From Ruditapes philippinarum (taxonomy: Eukaryota), in NCBI RefSeq assembly GCF_026571515.1, contig NW_026860885.1, positions 1 to 64,000 on the forward strand: a stretch of DNA of 64,000 nucleotides, in the 5' to 3' direction. The translations under genes and the position numbers were made by a program. The notes beneath the pieces were generated by a model, which saw only the letters and a program-made list of their open reading frames with translations, had not been told where the DNA came from and did no database searches. Positions 43,601 through 64,000 of the stretch are shown here, piece after piece. Within the stretch, counting starts at the first letter, position 1; each line of letters starts with the position of its first letter.

Positions 43601-46600
43601 CATGATTGGCCTTTAAAGTAATATTTTGATATCAGTTAACTTCTCTAGAAATGAAACATTATATTACTTACTTAAAGGGGTAAATGATATAAATCTAGTT
43701 TAAGTTAGTAATTGATAAAATATCAGTATGAATACAGTTGCAAATAATAGTAACTTAATTGAAATAATAATGTTTGTAAATTTAGTTGTTATACATTCGT
43801 TAAACTACCAATGAAGCAGTTTTATATTTAGGAAGGGAACGGTCTATTTTATTAATGTGTCCATGATTTTTAAAACTATGCATACATTTTCAGATACAGT
43901 CAAGGAGAAAAGAACTTAATTAAACAGTGGTTGAAAGTGTTATTGTCTTCGTAAAAGCTTTTCACCAACTTGACACACTTTTGTTTATCACGAAATAGCA
44001 AAAACCCCACATATAACGTAAAACCATTCTTCACTTTGTGTGTTGTATATTTTGTGGTGCTGTTTATGCCTTTTGTTAAACATAATTAAAGATGTTACGG
44101 AATCTGTGAACAAAACGGGACAACCCTTTAAATTTGGATTGTACTCGCATGTCATTTGAGTACTTTAACACCGAGGAACTTTGGGAGACCGAAGATTGTT
44201 ATAATAATGTCGATTTTTTTGTATGTGAGAAACCCTATCCAGTGGACGGTATAAACACAAAGCTTTTTTTTTTATTTATTTGTATTTATCAACATTTATT
44301 ATAACACACAATTAAGTCGTAAGGAAAATACTGCAATAAGTTTCTCTGTCTGTCAGTCCGTCTGCCCTTCAAAGTTTGTTTGTCCGAAACATACGTTTTC
44401 TACATAACTTTTCAATTTTATATAACTGTTTGATACAAATATAAGCTTCGCTGTAACAAAACGATCTTTAATGTCCATGAAGAGACTCGATCAAACCGAG
44501 CCCGAATTATTGTCGGTTTTGCCGTTTTAGACGTTATTTAGGGCTAACTATAGTTTTTCTCTATTTACATTCAGTACTATCATGCAAAAAATAGTAATAC
44601 TTGTATCATCCTTTAATATTATTACTTTTTTCTGAACACAAGGCACAGAAACAATTATATATCTTTGTACTGTTTACTGAATACTATATAAAATGCTTTC
44701 TAGCCGATATCAAGGAAGAAAAGTGTAAAAGTCTACCTAAAAAGGAAGACCACAATGCTTTACCATACTCCGGGAGATCTTGTCAAAATTGGCAAAACCT
44801 ATCTAACAATGCTAAAAATGATTTTGACAAGATGTTTTCCTCCATACGTATCTCGTTAGAAAATTCCAATGTGTGCGAGAATTTTGGGCAGGGTATTTCA
44901 TGGTGCTATGTTAATGATCCTGGCGAATTTATACGGGAACCATGCTTTTTGCATCGTAAGTTGTTAATTAAACATATGAAAAAAGAAATTGAGATTCAAG
45001 AAAAATATGTATTTGTTTTGACGAAATGTGCATTATCTTTAACAAGATGTCATTTCGTTTCAACGAATTATAATACTCGTATATATAGCAACAAAAAAAT
45101 GTTTTAATGTAATGTTAGGAAATATGAAATTATATAACATTATTAAGTTATTTCAATTTTATCGACGACCATCTAAAATCCCTTAAATATTATTCAAAAC
45201 GACTTCTGTGCATACAAGATAACTACATGTTTTTTCTGTTTTCCACGTACCTTTAAATAGAAAGCAAATTCGATTCAGACAATGACAAAAAACCTGTGTT
45301 TTGGAAGAGAATGCCTGAAGTAAATTGCTCTGACGGATCTTCAATACCTTTAATAAATTGGTGTGATAGAAATTTTGACTGTTTAGACTATTCGGATGAA
45401 TTGTCATGCCAGAATAATATCAAAGGTTTGTACATATTTTGTTTTATGTAAAATAGTTATATTGTTCTTAACAGGGTGTTAATCAGTTTTTGAAGTGGCA
45501 ATGTCTTTTTAAAGATTCGTATGCGGAAACCCTTAGTGATAAATAAGTTTCTACCGTTTACATCATGGTCAGATTCAATGATTTCATACATTCGTTTGTA
45601 ATTTATTTAAGTGTGATCACAATTGTTTTAGCGATCGATATGATACTGATAAATCCTTGCTTTGACCTTTGATTTGAATAACAATAAATTTAACCACAAA
45701 CATTAACATGTGCTTTCTTGTTAAAGTGACATTATGTCCAGCCAAGGGTAAGTAGTGAGTGAACAGGTGAATATCAAAATAAGTTTTCATTTTGCCATAA
45801 TTATTTTAAAAATTTAATAATTTACTTCATATAAACAATGAATGATGAACCTATAAATAAAATTTCTGTAAATGTCTATTAGAATTTACCTATAATGCCA
45901 AGTTTATATAAAGAGTGGGACAGTCTTTCTATATTTTAGGCAGATTTATATTTTTTTTTTTAATTTGGAATCTACTTTGTACTTAGATCACAATCTCGTG
46001 AATACCATGACGAACTCTAATTTAACTCAACGTCTAAAAAACGGGACATACTTTACCTGTAAAAATAGCAGAGAGCAGATATCGCTTTTAGCAAATTGTG
46101 ATGACGTCATCGATTGTCTTGATGCTTCCGACGAATCCGGTTGTTTGCATAGCAATATAGGTATTTTGTCTTGTTAACTGAAACTTGAAATCTACTACTC
46201 ATTTTTTATATATATATTTTTTTTTTTTGAATTTCGAAAAGTTGTTCTCATTTAACATTTTCTAATGTGTTTAAATACAATGTACAAGTAAATATCTTCA
46301 ATAAGCATATTTTTGCTGTGTTGGTTGTGTTGATAAGTATATTAAGTACATTTTGTATATCTGTATATTTGTTTAGGAAGTTATTTAAACATAATTAAAT
46401 AATGATTTCGTTAATCATAAGAAAGCATGTAAGCATGTACATTTTGTTACTTTGTTTCACTGTGTCGTGATAACCGTGTCCTTATGAAAGACATACTTGG
46501 TTCATATTTAATGTATTTTAACATAAACTTGTACAATATGAGTATAGAATGTGATGAAAACGAATTCTCGTGTGATGGCGGACATTGTATACAATTAAGT

Positions 46601-49600
46601 CAAGTTTGTGACTTGATATCCGACTGCGCGGACGGAACAGATGAATTTTGTGGTAAGATAATAAATATAATAGATCCTCAATTCCCCTCATGTTGACCGA
46701 TCTTTATTAGGTGTTCAGTATCATCCATGTTGACCGATCTTTTATAGATATTCTGTTTCTTCTATGTTGATCTATATTTAACAGATATTCAGTTTCCTTC
46801 ATGTTGACCAATTTTTAATACATATTCACTTTCCTCTTTATTTTCAGATCTTTAATAGATATTCCGTTTCCACCATGTTTACCAATATTTAATAGATGTT
46901 AAGTTTCGACCGATTGACAAATCTTTAATAGATATGAAGTTTCCTCCATCTTTTCCTATATGTTGACCGATCTTTAATATATACCAAGTTTCGTCCGTGT
47001 TGACCAATCTTTAATATGTATTCAGTTTCATCCGTATTGACCGACTCTTAATAGATATTAAATTTCCTCCATTTTGACCGATCTTTAATAGATATTCAGT
47101 TTCCTCCATTGCGACCGATCTTTAATAGATATTCAGTTTCCCCCATGTTGACCAATCTTAAAAAGATATTCAGTTTCCTCTTTGTTGGCCGATCTTCTAT
47201 AGATATTCAGTTTCGTCCATGATTAAAGATCTTCAATTTCTTCAATGTTGACCATTTTAATCGATATTCAGTTTCCTCCGTGTTGACAGATCTTTGATAG
47301 ATATTAAGCTACACCCATCGTGTTGACAGAACTTACCTCCATTTTGACCGATCTTTAATAGGTAATTCAGTTTCGTCTTCGATCTTTAATTGATATTCCT
47401 CCATGTTGACCGATCTTAGTAAATAATCAGTTTCTTTCATGTTGACCGATCATTAATAGATGTTCATATTTCTTCATTTTGACGGATCCTTAATAGATGT
47501 TCAGTTTCCTTCGTGTGACCGATCTTCGTTGATATATCATTTTTTGCCTAATTTGATATTAGTAAACGTGTGACTAATCTACTCATGATAACAGATCTTT
47601 ATAAGATATTCAGTTTCCTCTACGTTGACCGATCTTAAATAAATACTAAGTTTCGTCCGTGTTGACCGATCTTTAATGGATATCTAGATTGAATTTTTAC
47701 ATTGTGTTTACAGATCTTCGAAAGATATTCAGTTTCCACTTTGTTGACCGATCTTTAATTCCTCCGTGTTGACCGATGATGTATTTTCATTATTCGCCAT
47801 GTTGACTGATCTTTAATACCTATTCAGTTTTCTCAGTTTTGACCGATCGATAATAGATAATCAATTTCCTCTGTGTTGACCGAGCTTTGATATTTCAATT
47901 TTTTACTATTAATCATCTATACTCTATAACGAAAGAAGGCCTTGGACGCCTCAAGCTGGCACTTGCTCAAACTCCTGTCGAGATTCCCTCAACTAGTGGG
48001 AAAGCCAACTAACACAATATAATCCAAAGTCTATGAAGGGATTTGGACCATTATTAGCGGTTTATATACTTTTAACGAATAGATAGTGAGGACAGGTTTT
48101 TATATTTAAAAAATAAACACGATTCACCTAGAGTGATTTGCCGACATTTTATTTTCATCAAACATAGTTACTGTGAGGGCAGTTAATTCACAGCGTTATT
48201 TCTACGTCACGAAACTATTCAAATTACGAAAAATGAATGTCAAAACATATATTTGATTATCAAGCTTAGGGATAAAAAATTATCTAGGGACGATAGAGTT
48301 TGTCAGACAAATAGTCAAGTTATTACCATATTTGGACTTTGACTTGATGTTCAATATACTAGGCAATTTTATTCGTCAAACTTCTCAGTTAAGCACATAA
48401 TTCAAACCTAATGAAACCATTTACGATCGATCATTTTAGATTTCCAAGCGTGCAAAGTAAATGAGTTTACTTGTGAAAATAAGCAGTGTATTTCTGAAGA
48501 GAAGAGATGCAATGCTGTATCCGACTGTTTCGATTATAGTGATGAAATAAATTGTGGTTTGTATAATTAAGATATTGCATTATATAATAAATCAAGTTCA
48601 GAAATGAGAGACATGTCTAAGCACCTTCGCTTCTATGGTCTCAGGATAAGTCAACAAAATCGGGTTCTTTGCTAGATATATTTATTCAGTCTAATATAAA
48701 ATATACATGTAAACATGGACATGAAAAAAGATAGGCATCATAAATATATTACAAACAATATCATTTTACATAAAATTAATATTAAACAAATCAATTTTAA
48801 ATAAGAATTGACTTATTTAAATATGGTCATGTGCTGGAGATCTCGGCAAGCCTCGTTACTGCCCAATGGGCGGATCCCCTCGGCACGGATATTCTAATCC
48901 GAATTGCAACAAATGCTAGATATCATAATGTCGTTTTTATCTATACAAATCAAGACTCCTGTAAACACTCATTTCTCTGTGCTGATGATTACAAATGTAT
49001 CCCTCTACGACTGACATGTGATCGCTACCCTGATTGTAAAGATGCGAGTGATGAACGACATTGTCATGTTAATCCCCCAACTTCAAATGTCTTCACTGGT
49101 AATGACTATCTATGGTCTTTGCACACTTTTACAGGTAAGCGACATTTTTATACAATATAGTTATAAAAGTGGATTTTTATCTGTATATTGAAACTTCATG
49201 ATGCAAGTCTATTATTTGTTTTGTTGTTTGTTTGTTGTTTTTTTTTTTTTTTTTTTTTTTTTGTTTGTTTTATTTTTAATTGATTTTTTTTTTTTCGTAT
49301 ACTGTAACGCAACTGGGAGTTGACAAGACACAACGGATAGGGACCAAGTTAAGACCAATATCAAAATTTAAATTTCATTTTTGTCAATATTCCTTCTCTT
49401 TTAATTCAATAAATTTAACATTCAATACTTACTGGAAAGAAGACTGATCAAAAGACACATTTACTAAAAAAAAATGCTATGACCGTTAAAAATGTGTCAA
49501 GATATCTGAAGTTGGCCCTATCTTTGTTAATTATATTATTACACTTTATATTTATTTATATTGATTAATAATTGTTAATCGGCGGTATGTAACATTTTGT

Positions 49601-52600
49601 TCATAGACGAGATTATAGCATGTTATGATCAATGTGAAATTTACAAAGCAATGCAAAATAAACGGGATAACTTGATAGTGAAGCCTGAAACAGTCTTTGA
49701 GACATTTTAGTTAAAAGAAAGTATAGCAAAATGTTTCATCTTGTTCTTTTGTTGTTTTTCTTTTAAAGACTATTTTCATTGAGTGATGCTACATGTTTTG
49801 GGCGTGGTAATTCAGTGCGGTTTATTTAAACAGTATAACTTTTTAGAAGAATAAAAAACGACCCCTAGTTGAAAATATATGTCTAACATACAATGTTTTG
49901 TTAGGGTTGTGTTATTGGAACTGGGATTTCTGGGGGAATTCATCGAAAGAAAGCATATCTGGATGCACGTCTTTTGCAAAACACGAAGTGTTTAATCCGC
50001 AACGAGAAGTCATCATTGATTATAGCATTTATTATTCTTGTTTTACTCAGGTAAGGTCTGCTTTTAACATATAAATGTATGTGCATAATTTTATCACACG
50101 ATGCATTGTTAAGGGAAATGTTTGAACAATTGCTAAAAAAAAAAATTTCTTTTTCTTGTTCTTTTTAACTTCTATTGATCTGAAAAAAACATGGCTATCT
50201 TTTCCAGAAAACGTATCTAGTCTTAATATTGAGCCTCATCTTTAAAAGCATTTATGAAAATTAGTTTTAAAAGTATTAAGGCCGTTCGTTGCATATAAGT
50301 AAGTAGTTTATGGTCTGCGGGCAATGATTGTCATCAAAATCAATACCTCAGTACATCCAAATAAATATGCCTAAATTAACGGTAATCCGTCCACCTCGTC
50401 ACGTTGGAAATCCAAGTGGTGCACTTTAACGAGCACTTTATTCGCTATTTCTATTCAACGAGATATCCTTAATATTGAATGTTTTTTTTACTAACTAGTT
50501 TCACACATATCTGTCGGGGACCTTCGAGCAATGTATTGATGAGTTTCAAAATCCTTAAGCCGATAAATGTATATAATAAAAGTTTGAAAATTCATCCGAA
50601 CTTTAAGAGATTTCCAAAATCAATGAATTACTAACAGTATAAAAATCTGGAAACAAAGTGATCCCTCGGAAGCATTAATCACAACAAAATTACAAGAGAA
50701 TTGCAGACTCGGTTCTATTGAGTCTGTACATGAGGGATAATGAATAGGTGCAACATCCCTCACGCCCCTTAGCACCGACTTGAGCGGTACTCAATTCTCA
50801 ACACTTAATAGTGCTGGCATCAATGATCCCGAAGGACCAGAAAAATATAACAACACTGAAGTGAAGTACGGGGCAACTTTTTACAGCTGCCACACAGCAC
50901 TTGACACCTGCTGTTGTGAAGTATAAAAATCTGGAAACAAAGTGATCCCTCGGAAGCATTAATCACAACAAAATTACAAGAGAATTGCAGACTCGGTTTG
51001 ATTGAGTCTGTACATGAGGGATAATGAATAGGTGCAACATCCCTCACGCCCCCTAGCACCGGCTTGAGCGGTACTCAATTCTCAACACTTAATAGTGCTG
51101 GCATCAATGATCCCGAAGGACCAGAAAAATATAACAACACTGAAGTGAAGTACGGGGCAACTTTTTACAGCTGCCACACAGCACTTGACACCTGCTGTTG
51201 TGAAGTATAAAAATCTGGAAACAGACTCGGTTTTATTGAGTCTGTACATGAGGGATAATGAATAGGTGCAACATCCCTCACGCCCCCTAGCACCGGCTTG
51301 AGCGGTACTCAATTCTCAACACTTAATAGTGCTGGCATCAATGATCCCGAAGGACCAGAAAAATATAACAACACTGAAGTGAAGTACGGGGCAACTTTTT
51401 ACAGCTGCCACACAGCACTTGACACCTGCTGTTGTGAAGTATAAAAATCTGGAAACAAAGTGATCCCTCGGAAGCATTAATCACAACAAAATTACAAGAG
51501 AATTGCAGACTCGGTTTTATTGAGTCTGTACATGAGGGATAATGAATAAGTGCAACATCCCTCACGCCCCTTAGCACCGGCTTGAGCGGTACTCAATTCT
51601 CAACACTTAATAGTGCTGGCATCAATGATCCCAAAGGACCAGAAAAATATAACAACACTGAAGTGAAGTACGGGGCAACTTTTTTACAGCTGCCACACAG
51701 CACTTGACACCTGCTGTTGTGAAGTATAAAAATATGGAAACAAAGTGATCCCTCGGAAGCATTAATCACAACAAAATTACAAGAGAATTGCAGACTCGGT
51801 TTTATTGAGTCTGTACATGAGGGATAATGAATAGGTGCAACATCCCTCACGCCCCCTAGCACAGGCTTGAGCGGTACTCAATAAATTTAGGTCATACTGT
51901 AATACAGGCTCACCTGGCTCTGTTCTGATGGCTAGAGCTTATCATTTTAGGCTTAGCCAGCAGATAAAACATCATATCCAATAATTACATGTATATAGAT
52001 TAAACCTATATGGGATACATGTCGATCTAATACTGGATTTATTGAACAAGTTGAATGACATTATATAATCTAAATATCAACAAGTTCAATGTAGTAATAA
52101 AGCTACACTCATATAGTGTAATATTATCAAATAGTGCGTTTTACTCTTTGCCTTATGAAGCAAATGACGCCTCGTCAAAATACAGGCATGGCTGTTAAAT
52201 ACAGAGTCCCAAAAACTGCACGGGTATGTGAACTGATCTAAATAATGAATCAAAAGTCAACCCAATAACAAAATTATCTCGTATTTATAAAAGTGTGTGC
52301 CTGTTATTATTTTGAAGTTGTATTGCGCCTAATACGTACATTAAATATAACAATATCAGACCATTATTTATATTTCCTCGATAAAGTGCGTGTTGCAGGA
52401 GAATAATTCTCGCTTCCCACTTCTTCGATATAAACTGTTCTCATAGGAAATAAAATAAATAAGCTATTTAGTTAACTATTGATGATTTATTTTTACCGTA
52501 TATATCAAATGTAAAATTCAAATGACTTACTTTTTGTATAAATAAAATAAGAAAATCGTTGTCAAAATCATTATATATAATATATAGGTATGCAAGTGGA

Positions 52601-55600
52601 TGAAGGTGTTAATTTTTGTTTAGGTACAGATAGAGTGTGGATCCCATTTTCATGATGCAGATCTTGATCTCTTCAATGATTTCGAATATGAGTTTTGTTA
52701 CTGCATACTAGGTACAGTCAGATATAAAGTAGGGTCAATTGTGGGCAGGTATGTGTTAACTATATTTTATTTTACACGAAAACATTAAAAGACAACTAGC
52801 GTTTTAAGTTTTTTCATCAAATATAGATGCAATGTACGTTAATGATGAGAATGGATTTTTGAGCTTTTCAAGCATTATAAGTATGTTTCCAGTGTATTGT
52901 TAACATATATTTTGTAAAATTGTCAGTCAATTGTTAATAAATTATTAGAGTTTACGACATTTGGTAATGCTGTCATTTTCACTTTCAGAGTGGGTTTTTA
53001 TTGTTATGATATTCCCTGTACAAAACAGTATCTTAAACTTGTCTTAAGCTCGCTCGTCTCTTGTAAATAGTTGGTGGCAAAAGAAGTAAACTGTATAATT
53101 TGAAATGTTATCGAAAAATAAATTTTGCTGTTTTCGCGAATAATAGATTTTTGCGAACGTAAATGTACATCTCCAACTTATATCATTTAGATATAGGTCT
53201 AAAATTAAACTGGAAGTGCCAATATGCTAGCACACCTCTTTATCATTAGAGAAATATTAAGTATGATTGTACTATGTATTAATGATCTTAAGACAATTTC
53301 TAATATACTGTAAACTAAAATAAAGTATAGAAAAATCATAAGCCGTATTGCATAAAAAAGAAGAATGTTTGATGTTAACACATTCAAATTTGCAGATATG
53401 ATTTGGTTTCGGTAACAAGATGCGACGGAAGTCAAATGACAGAAATACATGTCGTTGAGGAAAGTATTTATCTTCAATCAGATTCGGGTAATGACGTGTA
53501 TGTTCCCCCGCCAAGTGATTTATTGGACGATACAAATGCACCTGCTTATTGCACTTATGGTAAACTTCCTTTAGAGTTCTCAAATATAATATAGTGGTTT
53601 ACACATAAGGTTTCCCTTTCTGTCGCACTTGCATGTTTGATGTTAGAAGGAAAATATACCTACATTTCAGTTCTTTTTTGAAACGATATTAATCAACCAA
53701 TTTTTCGTTATTAGGCAATGTTCGTGTAAGTTTCATTTAAGATTTACGCTGCTAAAACTCTAGCTGTCTTTTGTAAAATGTTATATGCAGCGTGATTTTA
53801 TATACAAAACATCGTCTTAATGTAGCATTTGAACTGTAGTCGTGTTGTGATAAATTTAGTTGCATGTATAATGCTAAGATAAGTATATGTCAAGGAGAGC
53901 GATGTTCAGAAAACGCAGTACCCAACAATGACGAGCCACACAGGATCATCGTTAAGACACCTTCCAGGTCAACAAACAAAAGGAAGGAGGGCACGTGAGC
54001 AAGACAAGGAAAGGGTGTTTTGTGATTAATATCATATTCTGTTACATACGGCGAAAGCAAAAAAATAACGATTTAAACCGCTTGTGAAGTTTTACAAGAG
54101 AGCTAGGTGTCTTCTATAATTGAGTAATTATAACAGTTTTGTTTATGAAAAGCCATGTATTCCATTGTTATATTTTATTAAAGGGTACAATATGACTGAA
54201 TTTGGTGACTTCTTTCATTGTAAGAGAGATGGAAAAATCATACCAAAGTCGATGAGATGCATTTATGCTGTAGATAATAGCGGGTACATGACAGGATGTA
54301 GATCTGGAGACCATTTACAAAATTGTGGTAATAAAAATATTTATCTGATTATAAGTATGCTATCTGACATAGAAATGAAAACAATCTTAAACTTATTGAA
54401 CAAACACTGTTCTTGCGCTTGATATTATCAGCAACATCTCAATAAATAATTAGACAATGAGCTTTCATAGAAGACAATAGCTGGACAATTATTCTTGAAA
54501 TATTAAAAACAAGTACGTGTTATATAAAGCATAGTCATCGGGTTTATTTAATTTCTTAATTACAAATTATGTTTTCGATAGTTACATTATGATATTATAT
54601 CAATAGTTTTAATAATGTCATGTTACAAAGATAATAATATTATAATCACAATACTATATTTCAGTTATTTAACCCTCCCTCAAACAAAATGGTATGTTGT
54701 ATCATGTTCATGCACTGAGGCTTTCCAAATGGCTAATGAAATGCAGGTTGTGCTACGTTTTTGGTTGTCTGCTTCAGTCTGCATTCTGGGGGAGCCACTA
54801 AGGTTTTCATCCACAGTTAGGCTAAACAGTCGCTATATGACATCAATATGTCACTACTCTGTGACCGTAAATGCATCAAAGTGAACTATCAAAATGTATT
54901 GTTTAAAATTAATTTCTCAAGATTCTAATATAGTATTTGAATTTCAGAAAAAATCAATTGTCCTGAAAATACAGTCAAATGTCCTGGAAGTTATTGTATT
55001 GAGCAAAGATTTCTTTGCGATGGACATACTGAATGTCCTGGAGGAGAAGACGAACAAAATTGCAGTATTTGATTTAAAGCTCTTTTTTCTTTTGTCATTT
55101 CTTATTTTGTTTCGTTTGTTTTGTCACAGGTTTTACAGCATTTCTGTCAGAAATTAGCATTTATTAAAAAGTCTGTATAGGAAGTTTATACGAGAAGTAT
55201 TCATAGTTTTACGTCAGATACCGTATTATACCCGCTTTTGAAAAACGGGTCGTATTATAGTTTCTCCGTGGCGGGCGGGGGGCAGCTTGGTGAGCGGCTT
55301 ACAATTTTTGTCCGGAGCATATATCTTATACACATATATGAATTTTAATGAAACTTCATAGAATTTGTTACAACTATGAAACGCTTTGTCGCTGGTCACT
55401 AGGTTTAAGGTCAAGGTCACACTTAAAGGTCACTGAAAAACGCTTGTCCAGAGCAAAACTTCTACGTGCATAGAGGGATTTCTTTATAACTATTTTGGTC
55501 CCTGCAGCCAAGGTCAATGTCAATGTCACACAGGGTCAAAGTTCAGACAGAAATATAAAAATGTGTATTCGGACCATTTAGTCATCATTTATTGAGGGAT

Positions 55601-58600
55601 TATTGAAACACAAATGGTCATTTTCATGACTTTGTAGAACTAAGCATTGCGAAAAGCACATAATCCAGGTCCCTGCTACCAAATTCAAGGTCACATAGAG
55701 TGGTCAAAGTTTGTGTACGGGGACTATTTAGTCATCATTTTTTGATGGATTGTATCACACATTATAACTATCATGACTACAAATGTGACAATTGTCAATT
55801 AGGGTTAATATTTGCAAGGTCAATGTCACTAGAGATGATAAAATATCCAGATATTGTCCGGACATTGCCCAGAGCATATCTCCTATATGCATATCTATCA
55901 TTCCCACATCTCTGACAAAAGCTTTTGTGACGGGTGAATTTTGAGATAATGTTGCCCTTCTTTTAATAATGTAAGACAAATGCGGAGAACAGGTGGTTTT
56001 ACACCTATTACCCGTTGCTACAGTATGATAATAAAAGGACATTCATAATATTGAAAATGATAAAACAATTACTTACAAATCCTGTCTAATGTTTTTCATA
56101 ACATTAACTTGACTGCCTTGACTGAATAAGCTAAAAATAAATGATTGCACCAATGACGTTTTTGTCTTAAATGACTGTAACTGCCTTTAGATATAACAGT
56201 AAAGTTTACACTGTGACAAAACTGCAGTTTTCCAAAACAAAAAACAAAGCGATTATTATTCTTGAGAATAGTAACGAATCATCGATCGTCTCAAGCTTAG
56301 TATTGTCCAATATTTCAGAGACAGGGTTTCTAATATATCGAGTGATTAAAGATTACAACTCTTCTGTGTATAATGATAACAAATACAAAGTTGCTAAGGA
56401 TATACACATCAGTAAATGGAGTACTCTATTTTTGACTGGATTCCGACGATTTCCAGAAATATGTACAGGTGAGTGAAGGAGATTTTAATAAACTTATTGG
56501 TGAATAAATTATCTGCAGTAATCAATGATACTATGTAAGAATAACATATATTTTTAATGCGCAATCATTTCTTGCATTTATTCAAATAGTCTAAAACTCC
56601 TGCATCAATAACAATTTCAGCTTCGAACGAAATGTCCAGCTGCACATATGTCACAAAAGGCTTTAAAAGAAAATATCGATTCTTTTAACTTGAAAACCAA
56701 TGTTATTATATAGATGACCTGGTTAGAATTTCCTCTCCTCTTTTCTGTATGTTTTATACGGTGTTCCGTTTGGAAAATCGTGATTATTCATTTCGTCTGT
56801 ACGATGGTACGATGGTGAAAACGCGATGGAACGATGGTGAAAACACCATGGTACGATTGTGAAATCGCGATGGCGCGATAGCACGATGGTAAAAACTAGA
56901 TATTACATCGCGTTTTCACCACCGTACCATGTTACATCGCGTTTTCACCATCGTACCATCGCGATTTCACTATCGCACCATCGCGTTTTCACTATCGTAC
57001 CATCGCGCCTTCGTGTTTTCATCATTGTACCATAGCAATTTTACAATCGTACCATCGCGTTTTCACCATCTGACTTTCGCGTTTTCACCATCGTGCAATC
57101 GCGATTTCACGATCGTGTCATCACGCTTTGACTATCGTACCATCGCGCTTTCACCATCGTACCATCGCACTTTCATTATCGTGCCATCGTGCTTTCATCA
57201 TCGTACCATCGCATTTTCACCATCGTACCATCGCGTTTTAACCATCTTACCATCGGGTTTTCATCATCGTGCCATCGCGATTTCACCATCATGTCATCGC
57301 GCTTCCACCATCGTACCATTGCGCTTTCACCATCGTAACATCGCGTTTTCACTATCATGTCATCGTGCTTTCACCATCATACCATCGCGTTTTAACCATC
57401 GTACCATCGGGTTTTCACCATCGTGTCATCGCGTTTTCACCATCGTGCCATGCGCAAATTTAAAACCGCGTGAACTTTTTAATGTCATTTGCGCAATATT
57501 TCATAACAGCTAATGTAAATTATTTCACAGTATTTGTGTCGTATAACATCTCATTTTCGTCGTGTTTGATTCTAAAATATTATCATTTCTGTAACAACTT
57601 TATCAAACATTGTTATGCTACTATAATGATGTTATCATTACTTATGCTTTTGTGCTATATATATTTATAATGATTCACTTACGTTTTAGAGGCTTCATAC
57701 GTTCCATGTGCTGGAAAGTACAGATGTTTGTCTAGTAAGCAATGTATACCACTTCAACAAGTCTGTGATGGTGTCATCCATTGCAGAAATGGGGACGACG
57801 AACGTCTTTGTAAGACTGTGTGCCCTCCGAAATGCAATTGTATCGGCTATGTAATCAATTGTAGGGCGGCCAACATATCTATGGCTGATATTTCATCATT
57901 GACAACACAGGCTATGAGTGCTGATTTAAGTAAAAATCTGGAAATAAAAGAAATACGCAAAGATCAGTTAAACTTTCCCTATATGTTACGACTTAATATT
58001 TCGTCGTGTGACATTGATAATATGCATAGAAAGGCTTTCTATCATTTGCACAATTTAATATCATTAGATCTTAGCAACAATAGAATACAACGGTTACGTC
58101 ATATGATATTTAGTAATCTTCGTAATCTAACACACTTGAATCTTGATAGGAACACGGAATTGACTCGCATTTCATCGACTGCTTTTAAAAATTTAGAATC
58201 AGTAAGAAGTTTAAAAATTTCAGGCACAAAGCTAAAAAAGATTATCTCACTAACGTTCTCTGGCTTACAGTTGGACAGTTTAGATATTTCCCACAACAAA
58301 ATTGAAGATATTGAAGATTATGCCTTCAACAATTCTATTGTTGGTAAGATAAATTTTGAAGGCAACAATGTGATAAAATTCGGAAAGTTTATGTTCAACG
58401 GCGTTTTATCACTTCGTGAGCTTCGTACACCTGCATTTAAATTCTGTTGTATCCGTCCTTGTTATTTGCCTGAAAAAGATTGCAAACCATTGAAGAATGA
58501 ATTTTCCTCGTGTGAAGATCTGATGAGAAATTCTGTCCTCCAAGCAGTTCTCTGGCTAGTTGGTGTATCTTCTTTGTGTGGAAACATATCGTCAATCATC

Positions 58601-61600
58601 TACCGTCTTGTCTACGATCGTGAAAGGCTTAAGATTGGTTATGGCATATTTGTAACTAATCTTGCAGTTGCAGATTTTCTGATGGGGGTATACCTGATCA
58701 TGATAGCTGTTGCTGATTCACTTTATAGAAACAGGTACAGATTTGTAACTGCTTCACTACACCGACACAGACTTTTATTATGTTTAACTGATTCATTCTA
58801 CAGAAATACGTATACTGGTTTATTTCTTCATAAGCAGGTATAGATTAATAACTGACTCATTCTAAAAAACAGGGCTGTACTGATTTTAATCTAATTCACA
58901 CTATTGAATCAGGTACTGATTTATAACATATTAATTTACTCTATAGAAACAGGAAGTGATTTGTAAATTATTCATGCATAAACGGTGTCTTTTGACAGTA
59001 GTCTTAGACTACTTAAACAAATTGCGATCTTCACTCTCCTAAACATTGTACTAAATTTCAACCTTTTCATTCAACTGTCATTTTTACATTAAAGCCCTTT
59101 ATATTTTTCAAAATGCCAATTCTTGTTTTTCAGAAACACTAGTTATAAAAACTATTCATATACATTTTTTTATCAAAAATAAACTAACACCAACAAAAAA
59201 TATTAAATAAAACTGCTTTAACAGTCTGTGATATCATTTGTGATATCATTATTGTAACTATTACATAGGTATTATTATTTCATAAATGCTGATTTGCACT
59301 TTTCAAACTGAATGTTTCTATATGTCTGCTTTACCAAACATACTTTTTTAAAACTGACCATTTGCTACATTAGATTATATACAGATAAAAATAATACTTG
59401 TCTTTTTAATTTTCTTCAATTTTTATCGTTTTAAATAGAGGGTTGTGTTAAAGAATGTCCTATGACTAAAACATAATCGTGTGGTGTTAATAACTAACAA
59501 TAAGCTTTGCTTCTGTATGGAAATATTGGATTAAAATAAGCTGAAATCGATTTTATTAACTCTAAGAGAAGTGATAATAATGTATCTCAAATACAAATAT
59601 CTCTTATTTTTCATTGGTCATTATTTTTGTACCATTTATTTTCAGATATATTTTTATGGATGATCAATGGAGAAACAGTAAATGGTGTGTCACAGCCGGG
59701 GTTTTGTCGACACTTTCGTCTGAAGCAAGCGTTTTCTTTCTTTGCTTGATCACATTAGACCGACTCTTAGTAATCAAGTTTCCCTTCGGCAGAGTCAGGT
59801 TTGGACCTATGAAGGCGTATATCTGTAGCGGAATGTGCTGGCTTATTTCCATAACCTTATCGATCATTCCAGTTCTGTACACTAGTCATTTTCAAAACAA
59901 ATTCTACTCTAAAACAGGAGTTTGTATTGCATTGCCTTTAACACGAGATAAACCTCCAGGATGGGTATATTCTGTGTCAATCTTTGTTGGACTTAATTTC
60001 TGCACTTTTATTCTTGTTGCCATAGGACAAGTTTCAATATTTACAGAACTTCGACGATCCACATCAGTTATGAAGAAGACAGAGAAGTCCAGAAAACGTG
60101 ATTTAAGAGTTGCTAGAAATCTTATTCTCGTTGCAACAACTGACTTCCTATGTTGGTTTCCAATAGGTGTGATGGGTAAGGTCTCGTACAAATCTTAGAT
60201 TGACATTAATTTTTCTTGTAAGTTTTGCATCACGATAAATCGAATGAATTTCCATTACCCAAATCTAGCCTCAACAAGATTTATGTAGGACATATTATGC
60301 AAAAATATATTATTAAGAGCATTTGTGTCTGTTCTACTTTTTTGGTAGAAAACAAATCTTTTGAATCATTTTAACTCCTTTTTTTCCAAACATATAATTT
60401 TATATTCATAAATCTAATATACATGTCCCATTAAAAATAAATACAACAATATCAACATTACTCTCATCTCTCTTTCAGGTATTTTAGCATTGAATGGATT
60501 TTCGATTTCAAGTGATGTTTATGCATGGTCAGCCGTTTTCATATTACCTATTAACTCTGCCCTCAACCCGTTTTTATATACAGTGACAGCAATAATCGGG
60601 AAGAAGGTATAAAATCATATGAAAGCTGATTATCTTAAATACATAAAGAGCACATTAAATACATTTTAGTGCCGTTACCAAGATTTTTTTTGTAGTTACG
60701 TTATAATCTATTTGCAATCCGTTTATGTTTTTCCTTGTTTCATTTTAGAGTTTTAATCCAAGTCTCGATGAGCAGAGTAGAACGTTGGTGCAGAAAGGTA
60801 AACAACTCTTACAAGCTCCAGTTAGATTATTCTTATTTTAACAAAATATTACGTTATATTTAATTAAAGCAACTATTTTTTGCATCACTCTCTAAATAGC
60901 ATTTAAGGGATTGTCTGTCCGTTAGTAAATCGCGGTGTTAAATGTTTGTTTGAAATAGGTTTATTTTTTCTACGTGTAATTATTGATCATGTGTATAATG
61001 AAGTTAAATAAAAAATATTAAATATTTCAAGTGTATCATACTGTAGGCGGTTAGAAATTATTTTAATACCAATACATTCTATTTTATAACCAAATATAAT
61101 CTTATTCCGTTAAAAAGCATACAAAAATTTGCATTCAACATGCTGCGTGTGATTCAACTTTCAAAAGGAGTGACGTTTTGCACTTTAACGAAACCATGGT
61201 GCCTGTACAGGTTTCGAAATATCAATTGTTAATCCTTTTAATGACATCGATCTTATATTTTTACATTCATAACTGTTATGTTAATATGAATCCTTTCAAA
61301 TTGTTTGCAATCATGATAGCCAGTCAAATATAATGCGCTAGCTTTTAGACGCTAAAATTATAAAAGTAATTTGATTTCTGTCATAAACCAGTAACATTTC
61401 TGTACAGTTTAATATTACTTGTCCCTTTTCTGTAGAAATTGGCTCCGCCATTCTAGAATACCAGACATTCAGCAGATCTGTGCGGATGAAACGAGAACTT
61501 GTACCAAAAGGAATGACTCGCAGTATTCAAGAAATACTTTATGACGACAGCTGTTTGTCTCTCAACTTTGTTACAACCATTTCCAAACAACTTGTCGATT

Positions 61601-62155
61601 ATCTGCGTCTATTACACGAGTCTTTTATTGCAATAGACAAGATATGTGAGACAAACATTTACATTAAATATGATAAAACAAAGGTATTTATCTTACATTA
61701 TCTTATACATTAATATAACACTTACAAAAGATATATAAATTTAGCTAAGTCAATTTCGTCAATTAGATGTTATAGACATATTGTGTAGTTTCAAGAATAA
61801 TTACTCCTATCCGTTTTTTAAATACTTGTCAACGATATAAAATGTTCAGTAATTAAACAAAAACATATAATATTCAAAGCGTTTCATTTGTTTTTATATT
61901 ATAAATGTGACATATTTGGTATTTTAAGATGTCGTACACATCGTAGGGATTTCCTAAGTTTCTTACGCAAAACACTTTCACGATATTTTAATTAGTAAAT
62001 TTGACTACTTTTTTATATAGATGAACAAACCAATTGTTGTAATCGATGCAAAAGTCTCGTTAACTGCCGACGAAAAAGCACATCAGGAAAATATCCGCCA
62101 ATATGGAAACCTTCTTCGAAAACTTATTCTAAAATGTAAAAATGGCGTGAAGTAG
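25663..62155 (+). CDS. GRL101-like (LDLa-LRR, type C LGR) rhodopsin-class GPCR with a giant mosaic ectodomain; ~38 exons, ~2,300 aa; possibly partly pseudogenised
   Basis: Hand-traced exons: 25663-25770, 26791-27120, 27436-27519, 27952-28070, 28386-28464, 28765-28797, 29218-29262, 29499-29581, 29990-30093, 31547-31638, 34230-34378, 35107-35235, 35799-35961, ~36497-36755, 38283-38482, 39014-39188, 40191-40403, 40901-41125, 41443-41664, 43053-43131, 44092-44248, 44704-44955, 45261-45425, 45987-46160, 46548-46652, 48440-48556, 48955-49134, 49905-50050, 52624-52748, 53396-53559, 54184-54327, 54948-55064, 57690-58734, 59646-60175, 60479-60606, 60749-60797, 61436-61683, 62021-62155 (TAG). Phases match except around 36497 and 43131-44248. 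The start exon is unresolved. Confidence 0.75.
26791..28464 (+). CDS. GPCR exons encoding an apextrin C-terminal (ApeC)-like domain
   Basis: [56 protein letters not shown]...YCLY match the ApeC WPxGxYxLP..GCP / WPxGxYC..CPxGF pattern. Confidence 0.75.
29218..31638 (+). CDS. GPCR exons encoding a divergent CUB-like domain
   Basis: [21 protein letters not shown]...MC...FFSFAF..SFKAYI; in-phase exons. Confidence 0.45.
30728..30968. mobile_element. 241-bp MITE (almost fully palindromic), intronic
   Basis: AATGAGCCGCGTCACGACAAAACCAATATAGTG... and ...CACTATGTTGGTTTTGTCGTGATGCGGCTCATT. Internal CAGACTGCGC..GCGCAGTCTG repeats. Confidence 0.9.
31903..32292. other. Assembly gap (N run)
   Basis: 390 Ns. 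Confidence 1.
32390..33690 (-). mobile_element. 5'-truncated LINE (L2/Crack/Daphne-like CR1 group), intronic, antisense to the GPCR
   Basis: [42 protein letters not shown] and KLWNDLP motifs. 3' UTR GGATCACAATGGAAATAAA. Confidence 0.9.
34230..35961 (+). CDS. GPCR exons encoding an F5/8 type C (discoidin) domain
   Basis: [13 protein letters not shown]....QTPWILVDL..IEGV..TFSLHYG...[12 protein letters not shown]...CLFFQMFGC. Confidence 0.85.
36497..36755 (+). CDS. GPCR exon encoding a PAN/Apple-like domain
   Basis: [30 protein letters not shown] (C-x3-C-x5-C...C). Confidence 0.7.
37075..37263. repeat. TTTCACCATCGT repeat remnant ending in GGCGCCATCGTA (possible IS3EU-like RTA terminus)
   Basis: Four (C)ACCATC(G)T motifs. 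The same AAGGCGCCATCGTAAAA motif occurs at 28869-28886. Confidence 0.45.
38283..41125 (+). CDS. GPCR exons encoding two CUB-like domains
   Basis: [33 protein letters not shown], then [45 protein letters not shown]. Confidence 0.75.
41443..44248 (+). CDS. GPCR exons encoding a C-type lectin domain (apparent lesions)
   Basis: [36 protein letters not shown]...GQP / DC..W.TEDC...FFVCEK. Exon 44092-44248 is 157 bp (+1 frameshift near 44125-44131). Confidence 0.75.
44704..44955 (+). CDS. GPCR exon encoding a kringle domain
   Basis: C...SGRSCQNW...NVCEN...SWCYV...EPC. Confidence 0.8.
45261..57810 (+). CDS. GPCR exons encoding ~8 LDL-receptor class A repeats (one atypical GRL101-type) interrupted by an unassigned Cys-containing segment
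   Basis: CD..DCxDxSDE motifs in exons at 45261, 45987, 46548, 48440, 48955, 54948 and 57690. The GRL101-type CIY..D....[11 protein letters not shown] variant is at 54184. Exons 49905, 52624 and 53396 are unassigned. Confidence 0.85.
46665..47890. repeat. 37-bp minisatellite (~30 degenerate copies), intronic
   Basis: Unit TTGACCGATCTTTAATAGATATTCAGTTTCCTCCATG; for example GACCG at 47076 and 47113. Confidence 0.95.
50636..51881. repeat. 284-bp tandem repeat, ~4.5 near-identical copies, intronic
   Basis: Unit starts at 50636, 50920, 51204, 51438 and 51723. The third copy has a 50-bp deletion. Confidence 0.97.
55225..55962 (+). mobile_element. HINE/pearl-like element with core repeats, intronic
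   Basis: 5' ACCCG..AAAACGGGT hairpin, GGCGGGCGGG block, repeated AAGGTCAAGGTCAC cores, 3' GACGGGT..CCCTTCTT. Confidence 0.75.
56800..57452. repeat. Foldback array of ~21-bp (TTTCACCATCGTACCATCGCG)n with an inverted 5' block
   Basis: 56800-56895 carries ACGATGGTGAAAACGCGATGG (the inverse orientation); 56905-57450 carries ~25 forward units. Confidence 0.9.
57810..60606 (+). CDS. GPCR LRR-NT, LRRs, hinge and 7TM
   Basis: CPPKCNC; LxxLDLSNNxI repeats; FCC..C...EFSSCEDLM hinge; TM2 [13 protein letters not shown]; TM3 SEAS..ITLDRL; TM6 TDFLCWFP; TM7 [12 protein letters not shown]. Confidence 0.95.
58711..58965 (+). repeat. Degenerate ~38-bp tandem copies of the exon/intron boundary of the large GPCR exon
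   Basis: CTGATTCAC/T..TAGAAACAGGTAC.GATTT.TAA-like units recur about 6 times after the donor at 58735. Confidence 0.65.
61436..62155 (+). CDS. Last two GPCR exons: C-tail resembling a degenerate protein-kinase C-lobe
   Basis: ELVPKG..SIQEIL...[37 protein letters not shown]...IVVID...[13 protein letters not shown], then TAG. Confidence 0.55.
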
Positions 62156-64000
62156 TAGGAAAAAAAAGAAAGAACAGCTAAACAAATCAAAATTGCAATC
62201 TGTTTATACTATAGACTACATGTATGTGAAAATGAATGACAGATCGTGTAATCTTTACCGTTTAGGTACTTCCTCCTGAATCAAAAATGATGTTTGGTTT
62301 TTATAACTTTTATAACTTTATGTCGATTCTTGGGTAAGTGTATATTGTTAGTGAACTATTGAAAATCGAGTAAGTTTGCATTTTGCCAAAATTCCTTTCA
62401 CCTTTGCAATGAATGAAAAAAAGCTGACATGGAAATTACATCACTATAACAATATTTATTGGTATCTACCTTTAACGTTCAATTTATAGAAATACGAGGG
62501 ACATTTTATACTTTATGCAGCTTTATAACTCTATTATATCCTTATAATATTTTCAATTATCAACAGTTGGTCTCAATTTTTAAATATATTGTCAAACCAG
62601 CAAAATATATAAAAAAAAACAAGATCAACAAGGAAGAGTGGCGTTCATTGAACGTATCACTTAACAATGAAAAGAAATGAGCATAATGTCACTTCAAACG
62701 AGACTTGCGAAGGTGTGATACACAAAGCATAAGAAACAAAATCAATGTCTTTAAGTTTACAGCGTTAAGTATTAATAAACTAGTACTATAAATTATATGC
62801 AAAATCGTAGTACAAATATGAAGCTTGTCCCTTTTAACGTGTTATTTTTTACTTTATGATTAATTTTGAAATTAAAGTGACACTTTTATCGTTTAACTGT
62901 AATTGCCTTAAACATCTTTATACATATATGTCCAAGACCATATTTCATATAGGACCAAGTCCATACTATTTCATGTTGTTGTTTTTGTTGTTGTTGTTTT
63001 TGTATTATTGTTGGTGTTGGTGTTGTTGTTATTCTTTAATTCATTTATTTATTAAAAAGCGTGTTCCACTATTTTTGGACATTCATTTGCCAATTATACT
63101 GGACAGGTGTATTTACTTATTGAACATGTATCACAACTAAGGAAGAAACAGTGATGTTGAACTAAACATGTGTTACATGCCCGCTTTTATAAAAATTGCC
63201 ATTAAGTATCTTCACGTTGTCCATTTTGTTGTTATTTTTTAGTGTTTTTATTAAAAGTTGTGACCAACATTCTTTAAATGATTGATTATGATATTTTTTT
63301 AAACTAATTCTGTATATTAAATGTTGTCATAAATGTGTCAATGTTGTTTACATAGATTCTAATATTTCAAACATATTTGTCTTTAATCGTGTCAAATTGT
63401 GTTAGCACAGTTATTTGCAAAATTTTTCATTACTATTTTGTGAGGAGAGCGGTGACCTGGTGTTAAAGCAGCATGCCTCCAGAATATCATGCTAATATTC
63501 ATATAAAAAGGTTGAAAAGTATTTAAAATTAAAATGTTGTGAAGTAACCAAAAGGAAGCGATTTACACATTACAAACAGCACTCACGACCCATTTAAATT
63601 ACCAAAATGTAGTCAAAATATTCAAAAATAGCTTTCACTGCGTTAGTAACATGTAAATTATTACTTAAATCTTGATTTTTTCCCCTTTTCATAAAATCCA
63701 AGTACATTATTCTCAGGTTTAATTTTATTGAACTATTTTGGCTCATCAGGAGGCATGCATGCAGCTTTCAAGGTTTTGCGTTCGGAACCATGGGTTTTAG
63801 CCATACTCGTGTCATAATTAACCATGTTTCCTCATATACTGGTTTCCTCATATACAGAACTGGTAACTTTCAAAAAGTGGACCCAAATATGCTTCAAATA
63901 AGATTAAAGTTTTCATCATCATTGAGCTAAAAAATGTGTTAAATTGAATATTTACTGAAATTTTGTCACAAATGTATTTTGTGTACTGAGCTATAACTAA

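What the first reader, a model, noticed from the sequence alone, without database searches (positions are those of the whole stretch)
61436..62155. GPCR C-terminal tail looks like a truncated pseudokinase C-lobe
Seen: after NPFLY and a short linker exon, two in-phase exons encode [57 protein letters not shown]-...-IVVID-...[14 protein letters not shown]. Established kinase order is hinge E, alphaD (SLxxxL), alphaE (IxxQLxxxLxxLH), catalytic loop (HRDLKxxNIL), beta8/DFG, alphaF (DVWSxGxLLxEL). Inference: the tail keeps this order but lacks the N-lobe, HRD, DFG and activation segment, so it would be a catalytically dead scaffold fused to a rhodopsin-class GPCR. GPCR-kinase fusions are not standard in animals.
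Basis: partly seen in the sequence, partly recalled or inferred. Interest (0 to 1): 0.8.

Follow-up and report, generated by a model that had tools for sequence, protein, structure and literature searches.

The report
Dead half-kinase tail on clam GPCR
The last two exons of this clam hormone-receptor-like GPCR gene encode a conserved, transcribed ~125-residue domain that descends from the core of a protein kinase but has lost what catalysis needs; the same tail occurs on GRL101-type receptors from molluscs to a centipede, a priapulid and a hemichordate, and I found no description of it.

Summary
Observation confirmed and interpretation supported. RNA contigs from three studies join them, through the 49-base linker exon, to the 7TM exons of a GRL101-type LGR gene (LDLa + LRR + rhodopsin-like 7TM) of what is almost certainly Ruditapes philippinarum.

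The tail exon pair recurs in at least 37 paralogous loci, with dN/dS about 0.2-0.26. Single-sequence searches and Pfam find nothing. Profiles built only from such tails hit only protein kinases in the PDB. The mollusc profile gives B-Raf 3.5e-6 and KSR 1.6e-5. An independent non-mollusc profile gives VRK3 9.9e-6 and titin kinase 2.3e-5. Both align alphaE, the catalytic loop, the DFG strand and alphaF in register.

AlphaFold2 (pLDDT 87.7) with Foldseek, and ESM Atlas neighbours, return kinase folds only.

The domain lacks beta1-3, the HRD Asp, the Phe and Gly of DFG, the activation segment and alphaG-I, so it is non-catalytic and most likely a docking or regulatory module (inferred).

None of about 200 relatives keeps a full kinase. 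Heterobranch snail, oyster and mussel relatives in the sample lack the tail.

This scan has already reached the same reading on paralogous loci of this genome (s1-803779, s1-803797, s1-803707). I found no paper describing it.

The parts
57700..58734 (+). Exon encoding the last LDLa module, the LRR region, TM1 and TM2. Its 5' edge lies at or before 57700; tblastn starts at 57689.
   Evidence: Pfam LRR_8 1.7e-22, Ldl_recept_a, 7tm_1 start. RNA contigs cover it and join 58734 to 59646. tblastn of paralogues.
59646..60175 (+). Exon encoding TM3-TM6 of the rhodopsin-like 7TM domain.
   Evidence: Pfam 7tm_1 2.8e-22. Joints 58734|59646 and 60175|60479 in runs X1 and X3.
60479..60606 (+). Exon encoding TM7 with NPFLY and the start of helix 8 (…[14 protein letters not shown]).
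   Evidence: Translation. Joint 60175|60479. The contig continues from 60606 into the first letters of exon 60749 (table 7).
60749..60797 (+). 49-base linker exon ([16 protein letters not shown], ends in phase 1). The FNPS.(D/E)EQ.RT motif is conserved in bivalve paralogues.
   Evidence: Translation. Joint 60797|61436 in X1, X3 and X5. Alignment of tails.
61436..61683 (+). Tail exon 6: N-terminal helix, hinge-like ELVPKG, alphaD, alphaE, degenerate catalytic loop and beta7.
   Evidence: Translation. Joints on both sides in three runs. At least 37 paralogous copies. Profile hits to kinases in this register.
61495..61512 (+). Hinge-like ELVPKG, corresponding to the kinase E-x-x-x-x-G that precedes alphaD.
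Evidence: The printed HMMER alignments start downstream of it. Low model confidence here (pLDDT block 69).
61561..61620 (+). alphaE equivalent ([20 protein letters not shown]). The His of LLH is nearly invariant in the mollusc alignment A4.
   Evidence: DSSP helix 47-66 of the paralogue model. Aligned to alphaE of VRK3, JAK2 JH2 and B-Raf. H65 at 90% or more in A4.
61627..61668 (+). Degenerate catalytic loop and beta7 ([14 protein letters not shown]). I-D-K replaces H-R-D, so Lys sits at the catalytic Asp position. The loop Asn is kept in this subfamily.
   Evidence: Column-for-column HMMER alignments to LHENEYVHGNVTAENIFV (VRK3) and LHAKSIIHRDLKSNNIFL (B-Raf).
62021..62155 (+). Tail exon 7 with stop codon: beta8 with the DFG-position Asp, a short linker in place of the activation segment, and alphaF.
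   Evidence: Translation. Joint 61683|62021 in three runs, with one contig running on into the 3' UTR. Paralogous copies.
62033..62053 (+). IVVIDAK: beta8 and the DFG equivalent. Asp is kept; Phe and Gly are lost.
   Evidence: Profile columns 'kvtGDvqis' align to 'vkiGDFGLAT' of B-Raf. DSSP strands 93-96 and 100-102.
62072..62146 (+). alphaF equivalent. ENIRQYG (62087-62107) corresponds to the kinase D-x-W-x-x-G motif. The Gly is nearly invariant.
   Evidence: 'seDiyqlGkLlrrll' aligned to 'qSDVYAFGIVLYELM' of B-Raf, and likewise in S. aureus Stk1. G117 at 90% or more. Helix 106-130 at pLDDT above 90.

Best explanation
The gene is a GRL101-type leucine-rich-repeat GPCR (LDLa and LRR ectodomain, rhodopsin-like 7TM). 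After helix 8 and a short linker, its cytoplasmic tail is a compact domain of about 125 residues that descends from a protein kinase domain. It keeps a long helix (possibly alphaC), the hinge, alphaD, alphaE, the catalytic-loop strand pair, the DFG strand and alphaF. It has lost beta1-beta3 (the ATP-binding half of the N-lobe), the HRD Asp, the Phe and Gly of DFG, the whole activation segment and alphaG-alphaI. It therefore cannot phosphorylate anything (inference from the missing parts). Because it is under purifying selection in dozens of paralogues and is kept across protostomes and a hemichordate, it most likely works as a non-catalytic docking or regulatory module on the receptor's inner face. 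It would recruit or position a signalling or trafficking partner as the 7TM bundle changes state, as pseudokinase domains do in JAKs, KSR and receptor guanylyl cyclases. Shown: gene structure, transcription and splicing, conservation, homology and predicted fold. Inferred: loss of catalysis and the scaffold role.
For: Splicing of the tail exons to the 7TM exons in transcript contigs of three studies. At least 37 paralogous exon copies, 35 of them open. The cognate last exon lies downstream. dN/dS is 0.26 and 0.20. Spliced database models join the 7TM domain and the tail (P0008, P0017 and others). Profiles built from tails only were searched against 177,635 PDB sequences. A1 gave 13 hits, all VRK3 or JAK2 JH2. 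A3 gave kinases in 59 of the best 60, best E 0.0019. A4 (pan-mollusc) gave 863 hits at E<=1 with the best 60 all kinases: B-Raf 3.5e-6, TYK2 5.9e-6, KSR 1.6e-5, PAK1 2.3e-5. A5 (non-mollusc tails only) gave VRK3 9.9e-6, titin kinase 2.3e-5 over alphaD-alphaF and KSR1 8.7e-4, with the best 60 all kinases. AlphaFold2 models of a spliced paralogue tail have pLDDT 74.9 and 87.7 and pTM 0.65 and 0.78, with the order helix, alphaD, alphaE, beta6-beta9, alphaF. In the ESM Atlas, 10 of 10 listed structural neighbours are kinase clusters with TMq 0.67-0.71, and kinase clusters lead the named feature neighbours.
Confidence: 0.8

Rival explanations
1. The tail is a lineage-specific alpha/beta tail domain of non-kinase origin. 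The kinase-like motif order is convergent, and the structure predictors copy the most familiar fold.
For: No Pfam hit. No single-sequence hit. Foldseek E > 0.001.
Against: Two independent profiles containing no kinase sequence reach E of 1e-5 to 1e-6 against kinases only. They align the same two blocks in register, with the activation-segment gap where expected. Scallop, ark-clam, hemichordate and sea-cucumber tails carry an H-G-x loop at the place where VRK3 and JAK2 JH2 have H-G-N.
Confidence: 0.07
2. The tail is still an enzyme: a minimal atypical kinase or nucleotide-binding module (Bud32/RIO/Kdo-like short C-lobe) that uses the N-terminal helix or the receptor's intracellular loops in place of an N-lobe.
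For: The catalytic-loop Asn and the DFG-position Asp, which bind metal in kinases, are kept in this subfamily. Bud32, PRPK and Kdo/heptose-kinase clusters are among the structural neighbours.
Against: There is no Gly-rich loop, no VAIK Lys and no room for beta1-beta3; the roughly 150-residue tail after NPxxY is almost wholly taken up by helix 8, the linker exon and the domain itself. The residue at the catalytic Asp position is K/Q/N/E/G and varies. The Asn and Asp are not conserved across subfamilies or phyla.
Confidence: 0.05
3. The tail exons are a gene-model artefact. They would belong to a separate small gene or to a minor isoform rather than to the receptor.
For: RefSeq annotates tail-only mini-proteins (P0004, 132 aa; P0021, 168 aa). 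Some receptor models read through the exon-6 donor into the intron (P0022, P0014).
Against: Overlapping transcript contigs chain exon 3 to 4 to 5 to 6 to 7 and into the 3' UTR in three studies, with no depth in the introns. Many full-length models in two clam species join 7TM and tail.
Confidence: 0.03

Closest known systems
Pseudokinase domains (JAK JH2, VRK3, KSR, RNase L pseudokinase domain)
   Same: They are among the best sequence and fold matches. They share a degenerate catalytic loop (H-G-N type in scallop tails, I-D-K here), conserved alphaE and alphaF, and a non-catalytic regulatory or scaffolding logic.
   Different: They are complete bilobal domains of about 250-300 residues, and many still bind nucleotide. 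The tail has about 125 residues and lacks beta1-3, the activation segment and alphaG-I. It does not reach the Pfam kinase thresholds.
GPCR-kinase fusions: GPCR-TKL/K and GPCR-TK of choanoflagellates and sponges, GPCR-bigrams and GPCR-PIPK of oomycetes and amoebozoans (PMC12716839, PMC6033456, PMC5784254)
   Same: A 7TM receptor followed by a C-terminal kinase-derived domain.
   Different: Those carry full, Pfam-detectable kinase domains on unrelated 7TM families. Among animals they are reported only in sponges (PMC12716839). Here the 7TM domain is a bilaterian LGR and the kinase part is a truncated dead remnant.
GRL101 / type C LGRs (relaxin-receptor-like RXFP1/2; Lymnaea GRL101)
   Same: LDLa + LRR ectodomain and rhodopsin-like 7TM. 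Database relatives are named GRL101-like. The family is known to be expanded in R. philippinarum (PMC6831834).
   Different: The papers read describe only the ectodomain and the 7TM domain. Heterobranch snail GRL101 models (Biomphalaria, Aplysia, Candidula), oysters and mussels in my sample have tails of 12-100 residues without the domain.
Kinase-homology domain of receptor guanylyl cyclases (from established knowledge, not tested here)
   Same: A membrane receptor with an intracellular dead kinase domain that regulates signalling.
   Different: Single-pass receptors with a complete domain placed between the membrane and a cyclase. Here the remnant is the C-terminus of a 7TM receptor.
Minimal kinases Bud32/PRPK, RIO, Kdo/heptose kinases
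   Same: A short C-lobe without a long activation segment. They appear among the fold neighbours.
   Different: They keep the N-lobe and the catalytic residues and are enzymes.

Membership tests
Eukaryotic protein kinase domain (Pfam PF00069 / PF07714) | Score above the Pfam gathering threshold | tested here: not met
   No kinase family at E<=10 for either window exon, for P0004, for full-length relatives or for the 39 rows of A1. No kinase Pfam appears in the precomputed columns of the 240 rows listed (120 per search, overlapping; about 200 distinct relatives).
Eukaryotic protein kinase domain (Pfam PF00069 / PF07714) | N-lobe with Gly-rich loop, VAIK Lys and beta1-beta5 | tested here: not met
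   The whole tail after NPxxY is about 140-160 residues. About 20-25 of them (helix 8 and the linker exon) precede the modelled domain. The model has one long helix and short strands before alphaD. No GxGxxG or VAIK is present.
Eukaryotic protein kinase domain (Pfam PF00069 / PF07714) | Catalytic loop HRDxxxxN | tested here: not met
   It reads I-D-K-I-C-E-T-N here, and the catalytic Asp position holds K/Q/N/E/G in the family. The Asn is kept only in some subfamilies.
Eukaryotic protein kinase domain (Pfam PF00069 / PF07714) | DFG motif and activation segment ending in APE | tested here: not met
   It reads D-A-K here; the Asp is kept in many subfamilies as G-D-V. Fourteen residues separate this Asp from the alphaF motif. 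The kinase alignments need an insertion of about 33 residues at this point.
Protein kinase-like superfamily (homology, not completeness) | Significant profile similarity in the correct register, and a kinase C-lobe fold | tested here: met
   E 3.5e-6 (A4) and 9.9e-6 (A5), with kinases only among the best 60. The alphaF D-x-W-x-x-G equivalent has a nearly invariant Gly. Foldseek and Atlas neighbours are all kinases.
GRL101-type LGR (type C leucine-rich-repeat GPCR) | LDLa module(s) + LRR region + rhodopsin-like 7TM with NPxxY | tested here: met
   Pfam LRR_8, Ldl_recept_a and 7tm_1 on the window exons. NPFLY. Nearest proteins are named GRL101-like, with 73-88% identity between their 7TM regions. 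Upstream LDLa exons lie in the window.
GPCR-kinase fusion families (GPCR-TKL/K, GPCR-TK, GPCR-PIPK) | Complete C-terminal kinase domain recognisable by standard domain models, on their characteristic 7TM families | tested here: not met
   The kinase part is truncated and invisible to Pfam. The 7TM domain is an LGR. The definitions come from PMC12716839.

The most novel reading that the evidence does not exclude
GRL101-type receptors are relics of an ancient bilaterian GPCR-kinase fusion, and their half-kinase tail still signals independently of G proteins. It would do so by pairing allosterically with, or recruiting, a partner kinase or pseudokinase. This orphan receptor family has been proposed as an insulin/IGF-like peptide receptor (PMC8286064), so it would be a hybrid between GPCR and receptor-kinase signalling.
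Probability: 0.15. Interest if true: 0.85.

Novelty: new variant of a known kind. Interest (0 to 1): 0.68.

Why it matters
A recent survey (PMC12716839) reports GPCR-kinase fusions in protists and, among animals, only in sponges. Here a whole family of bilaterian class A receptors carries a selected, truncated kinase remnant that standard domain models do not see. The family is GRL101-type LGRs, which are orphan, hugely expanded in clams, and proposed to be insulin/IGF-like peptide receptors.

It gives a concrete handle on how these receptors might signal or be regulated. It is a natural example of a stable "half-kinase" mini-domain, of interest to pseudokinase structural biology. It also corrects annotation: tail-only mini-genes and read-through C-termini occur in the RefSeq models of Ruditapes and Mercenaria.

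The patchy distribution makes gain and loss testable. The tail is present in venerid, pectinid and ark clams, abalone, limpet, a centipede, a priapulid and a hemichordate. It is absent from the sampled heterobranch snails, oysters, mussels and a coral.

Tried and rejected
- **Pfam:** scans of each window exon, of spliced paralogue tails and of all rows of A1 found no kinase family.
- **Single-sequence searches:** phmmer of exon 6 and exon 7 against the PDB found nothing. phmmer of exon 6 against 1.84 billion representatives found only 16 tails and no kinase. Single sequences are too diverged, so profiles were needed.
- **Tail-region search with P0008:** it found only P0008 and P0017 because of word-index limits.
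- **Alignment A2:** MAFFT misplaced the first 12 residues of the divergent last exons. I rebuilt it as A3 with those pieces trimmed.
- **Raw RNA run X24:** only 6 reads, too few for strand or level, although all first mates lie on the minus strand.
- **Fuller kinase in relatives:** none of the roughly 200 relatives has a tail longer than about 217 residues or a kinase Pfam.
- **Crinoid protein P0166 (Anneissia):**
- **Joined product not made:** Whole-tail profile, fold and Atlas work used database proteins of paralogues and orthologues, plus the window's exons as separate alignment rows.
Full report
**1. What is at the coordinates**

The + strand of 57.7-62.2 kb carries the 3' half of a large gene.
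- Exon ≤57700-58734 encodes an LDLa module, leucine-rich repeats and TM1-2.
- Exon 59646-60175 encodes TM3-6.
- Exon 60479-60606 encodes TM7 with NPFLY (Pfam LRR_8 1.7e-22, Ldl_recept_a, 7tm_1 2.8e-22).
- A 49-base linker exon follows (60749-60797, [16 protein letters not shown]).
- The two exons of the finding come last: 61436-61683 and 62021-62152, with the stop at 62153-62155.

tblastn with paralogous proteins shows further upstream exons back to at least 44.1 kb.

**2. Is the tail really part of the receptor?**

Yes. I laid Logan contigs of three runs from three studies, plus one raw RNA run, on 57700-62400.
- Coverage is confined to the predicted exons, and the introns have zero depth.
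- Contigs carry GT..AG joints at 58734|59646, 60175|60479, 60797|61436 and 61683|62021. The last two appear in all three contig runs.
- Loose ends show 60606 continuing into the first letters of exon 60749, and 60749 preceded by the last letters of exon 60606.
- One 2,313-base contig runs from the end of exon 4 through exons 5, 6 and 7 into the 3' UTR.
- The tool labels these runs "RNA? (a guess)". Exon-only coverage with canonical joints is what RNA gives.
- The raw run gave only six reads, all with the first mate on the minus strand. That fits + strand transcription in a standard stranded library but is too thin to lean on.

**3. Organism and family**

The exon-6 peptide finds 16 proteins among 1.84 billion representatives, and all are the same kind of tail. 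Full-length hits are named [quoted passage not shown] or are Mercenaria mercenaria models. Contigs C67 and C8843 of the window's own assembly have exactly the lengths recorded for the contigs encoding P0008 and P0017. I therefore infer that the genome is R. philippinarum.

In that genome the exon recurs with the same boundaries.
- At least 37 loci match at E 1e-15 to 1e-33. Two of them carry stop codons.
- Most loci checked carry the cognate last exon downstream, and the NPFLY exon lies upstream where the fetched stretch reaches that far.
- A profile search adds six more diverged loci, at least two of which also sit behind GRL101-type 7TM exons.
- Pairwise dN/dS among paralogues has a median of 0.26 for exon 6 (85 pairs) and 0.20 for exon 7 (50 pairs). 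The tail is under purifying selection.
- The expansion of GRL101 genes in this clam is already published (PMC6831834).

**4. Kinase test by sequence**

Single sequences and Pfam see nothing. Profiles do. No profile contained any kinase sequence.

| Profile | Content | PDB result |
|---|---|---|
| A1 | 39 rows, close paralogues plus Mercenaria | 13 sequences at E<=10, all the pseudokinases VRK3 and JAK2 JH2, E 0.45-1.5 |
| A3 | A1-type rows plus diverged paralogues | 282 hits at E<=10; 59 of the best 60 are kinases; best E 0.0019 |
| A4 | 25 rows: tails of scallops, limpet, abalone, a unionid and diverged clam subfamilies, taken from spliced database proteins | 863 hits at E<=1; best 60 all kinases |
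| A5 | 8 non-mollusc tails only: centipede, priapulid, hemichordate, echinoderms, one unplaced | 338 hits at E<=10; best 60 all kinases |

- **A1:[18 protein letters not shown] aligned column for column to LHENEYVHGNVTAENIFV of VRK3.
- **A3:** the S. aureus Stk1 alignment spans alphaD to alphaF with a 33-residue insertion exactly where the activation segment lies. B-Raf rows cover a matching range.
- **A4:** B-Raf 3.5e-6, TYK2 5.9e-6, KSR 1.6e-5, PAK1 2.3e-5. One block covers alphaE, the catalytic loop, beta7 and the DFG strand ('kvtGDvqis' against 'vkiGDFGLAT'). A second block covers alphaF ('seDiyqlGkLlrrll' against 'qSDVYAFGIVLYELM').
- **A5:** an independent replicate. VRK3 9.9e-6; titin kinase 2.3e-5 over profile positions 22-120 against residues 87-197; KSR1 8.7e-4.

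**5. Kinase test by structure**

Instead I folded P0004, a RefSeq protein of a paralogue that consists of the spliced tail. It is 70% identical to the window's exon 6 and 66% to its exon 7.
- With A1 as the alignment: pLDDT 74.9, pTM 0.65.
- With A4: pLDDT 87.7, pTM 0.78, and all five models at 82.6 or above.
- The element order is a long helix, a short strand, alphaD, a 20-residue alphaE, two strand pairs and a 25-residue alphaF.
- Foldseek against the PDB lists only kinases and pseudokinases among the rows shown for both models. Examples are the RNase L pseudokinase domain, ULK2, ASK1, Mnk1, JAK1 and TYK2 JH2, Bud32, LRRK2 and KKT14. The second model gave probability 0.96-1.0 for all but one listed row; the first gave 0.44-1.0. 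TMq is mostly 0.5-0.6. E-values are 0.006-0.15, above the tool's 0.001 line. One row, a pre-40S chain, is not identified by the table.
- The ESM Atlas holds its own ESMFold model of P0004. All ten of its listed structural neighbours are kinase clusters (TMq 0.67-0.71, 110-126 residues aligned), and kinase clusters lead the named feature neighbours.

**6. What is kept and what is lost**

The register below comes from the HMMER alignments.

Kept:
- alphaD and alphaE, with a nearly invariant His in LLH;
- the strands flanking the catalytic loop;
- the loop Asn (ETN) in this subfamily;
- the Asp at the DFG position (VVIDAK here, G-D-V in many other subfamilies);
- the alphaF motif with a nearly invariant Gly.

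Lost:
- the Gly-rich loop, the VAIK Lys and beta1-3, for which there is no room;
- H-R-D, which is I-D-K here, with K/Q/N/E/G at the catalytic Asp position across the family. Scallop, ark-clam, hemichordate and sea-cucumber tails read H-G-x, like the JH2 and VRK3 loops;
- the Phe and Gly of DFG;
- the activation segment: 14 residues separate the DFG Asp from the alphaF motif;
- everything after alphaF.

The leading helix plus VRMK-E-xxP-G looks like an alphaC/beta5/hinge remnant. This rests only on alignment coverage and is an inference.

**7. Distribution**

Two searches on 7TM-containing regions gave about 200 LGR relatives. I scanned their C-termini locally with the tail profiles.

The domain is present, with tails of about 140-170 residues after NPxxY, in:
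- Ruditapes, Mercenaria, Pecten, Ylistrum, Argopecten, Tegillarca, Haliotis and Patella;
- the centipede Strigamia (6e-11);
- Priapulus (1e-11);
- the hemichordate Glandiceps (2.5e-10);
- the brittle star Amphiura, weakly (8.5e-4);
- sea urchins and a sea cucumber, marginally.

These E-values are for small local databases of 137 and 81 proteins.

It is absent, with tails of 12-100 residues, from the sampled heterobranch snail GRL101s (Biomphalaria, Aplysia, Candidula, Plakobranchus), oysters, mussels and Acropora. No relative has a tail long enough for a whole kinase or a Pfam kinase hit. The fusion and the truncation therefore look old (stem bilaterian or earlier) and were followed by repeated loss. 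That conclusion is inferred from presence and absence, not from a tree.

**8. How it most likely works**

With no ATP-binding half and no catalytic Asp, the tail is not an enzyme. It is conserved, compact and placed directly after helix 8, where receptor state is read by G proteins, GRKs and arrestins. I therefore favour a docking or regulatory module, in analogy with JAK JH2, KSR and the kinase-homology domain of receptor guanylyl cyclases. Nothing here tests that. The partner, and even whether the tail acts in cis on the receptor or in trans, is unknown.

**9. Known or new**

- Full-text searches found no paper linking GRL101 to a pseudokinase or kinase-like tail.
- The one LGR/GRL101 paper searched for these terms (PMC8286064) describes only the ectodomain and the 7TM domain in the passages returned.
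- A recent survey states that GPCR-kinase fusions among animals were found only in sponges (PMC12716839).
- I could not query InterPro, Gene3D or SUPERFAMILY, which may already flag a kinase-like superfamily match on some entries.
- This scan has already reported the same tail on paralogous loci of this genome (s1-803779, s1-803797, s1-803707). I read those notes after my own tests. They agree with my reading but are not independent evidence.

**10. Verdict**

Confidence is high for homology and fold, and low for function. This is a new variant of a known kind: a truncated pseudokinase remnant as the conserved tail of a bilaterian LGR family.

Noticed in passing
window 56802-57455: A minisatellite of 22/44-base units (about 21 copies of the 22-mer, 75-77% matches) lies in the intron upstream of the LDLa/LRR exon. 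It produces the long spurious ORFs '[12 protein letters not shown]...' on both strands.
   Followed up: partly
window 44149-57700: tblastn with paralogue P0025 finds further upstream exons of the same gene (LDLa-type pieces at 44.1-49.1 kb, 54.2-55.1 kb and 56.2-56.5 kb). The receptor gene is far longer than the part studied here.
   Followed up: partly
P0004, P0021, P0022, P0014 (RefSeq models of Ruditapes and Mercenaria paralogues); L002: Annotation problems in public models. Tail-only mini-proteins are annotated as separate 'uncharacterized' genes (P0004, P0021). Some receptor models read through the exon-6 donor into the intron and end in junk (P0022, which matches locus L002, and P0014).
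   Followed up: partly
G000:C12751:89042-89287 and G000:C8954:63348-63572: Two paralogous tail exons carry in-frame stop codons (more appear in the profile match of C8954). They are probably pseudogenised copies within the expanded family.
   Followed up: no
window 60749-60797 and the corresponding part of about 40 bivalve tails: The linker exon carries a strongly conserved motif, [KQ]xF(N/S)PS.(D/E)EQ.RT, between helix 8 and the kinase-like domain. It is conserved even in subfamilies whose kinase-like part is very diverged. It could be a phosphorylation or binding site.
   Followed up: no
L033-L035 (G000:C2407, C10607, C3201) and the matching Mercenaria proteins: Diverged subfamilies have a last exon that starts V(T/I)G(D/N)VQ and an alphaF motif D(I/M)(Y/F)x(F/L/V)G. 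This is closer to the kinase G-D-F-G and D-x-W-x-x-G than the window's own IDAK and ENIRQYG.
   Followed up: partly
window 57763-62306: More than 40 single-base differences and one 1-base deletion (62270, 3' UTR) separate the transcript contigs from the window. The runs differ in which ones they carry, as expected for alleles in a highly polymorphic bivalve.
   Followed up: no
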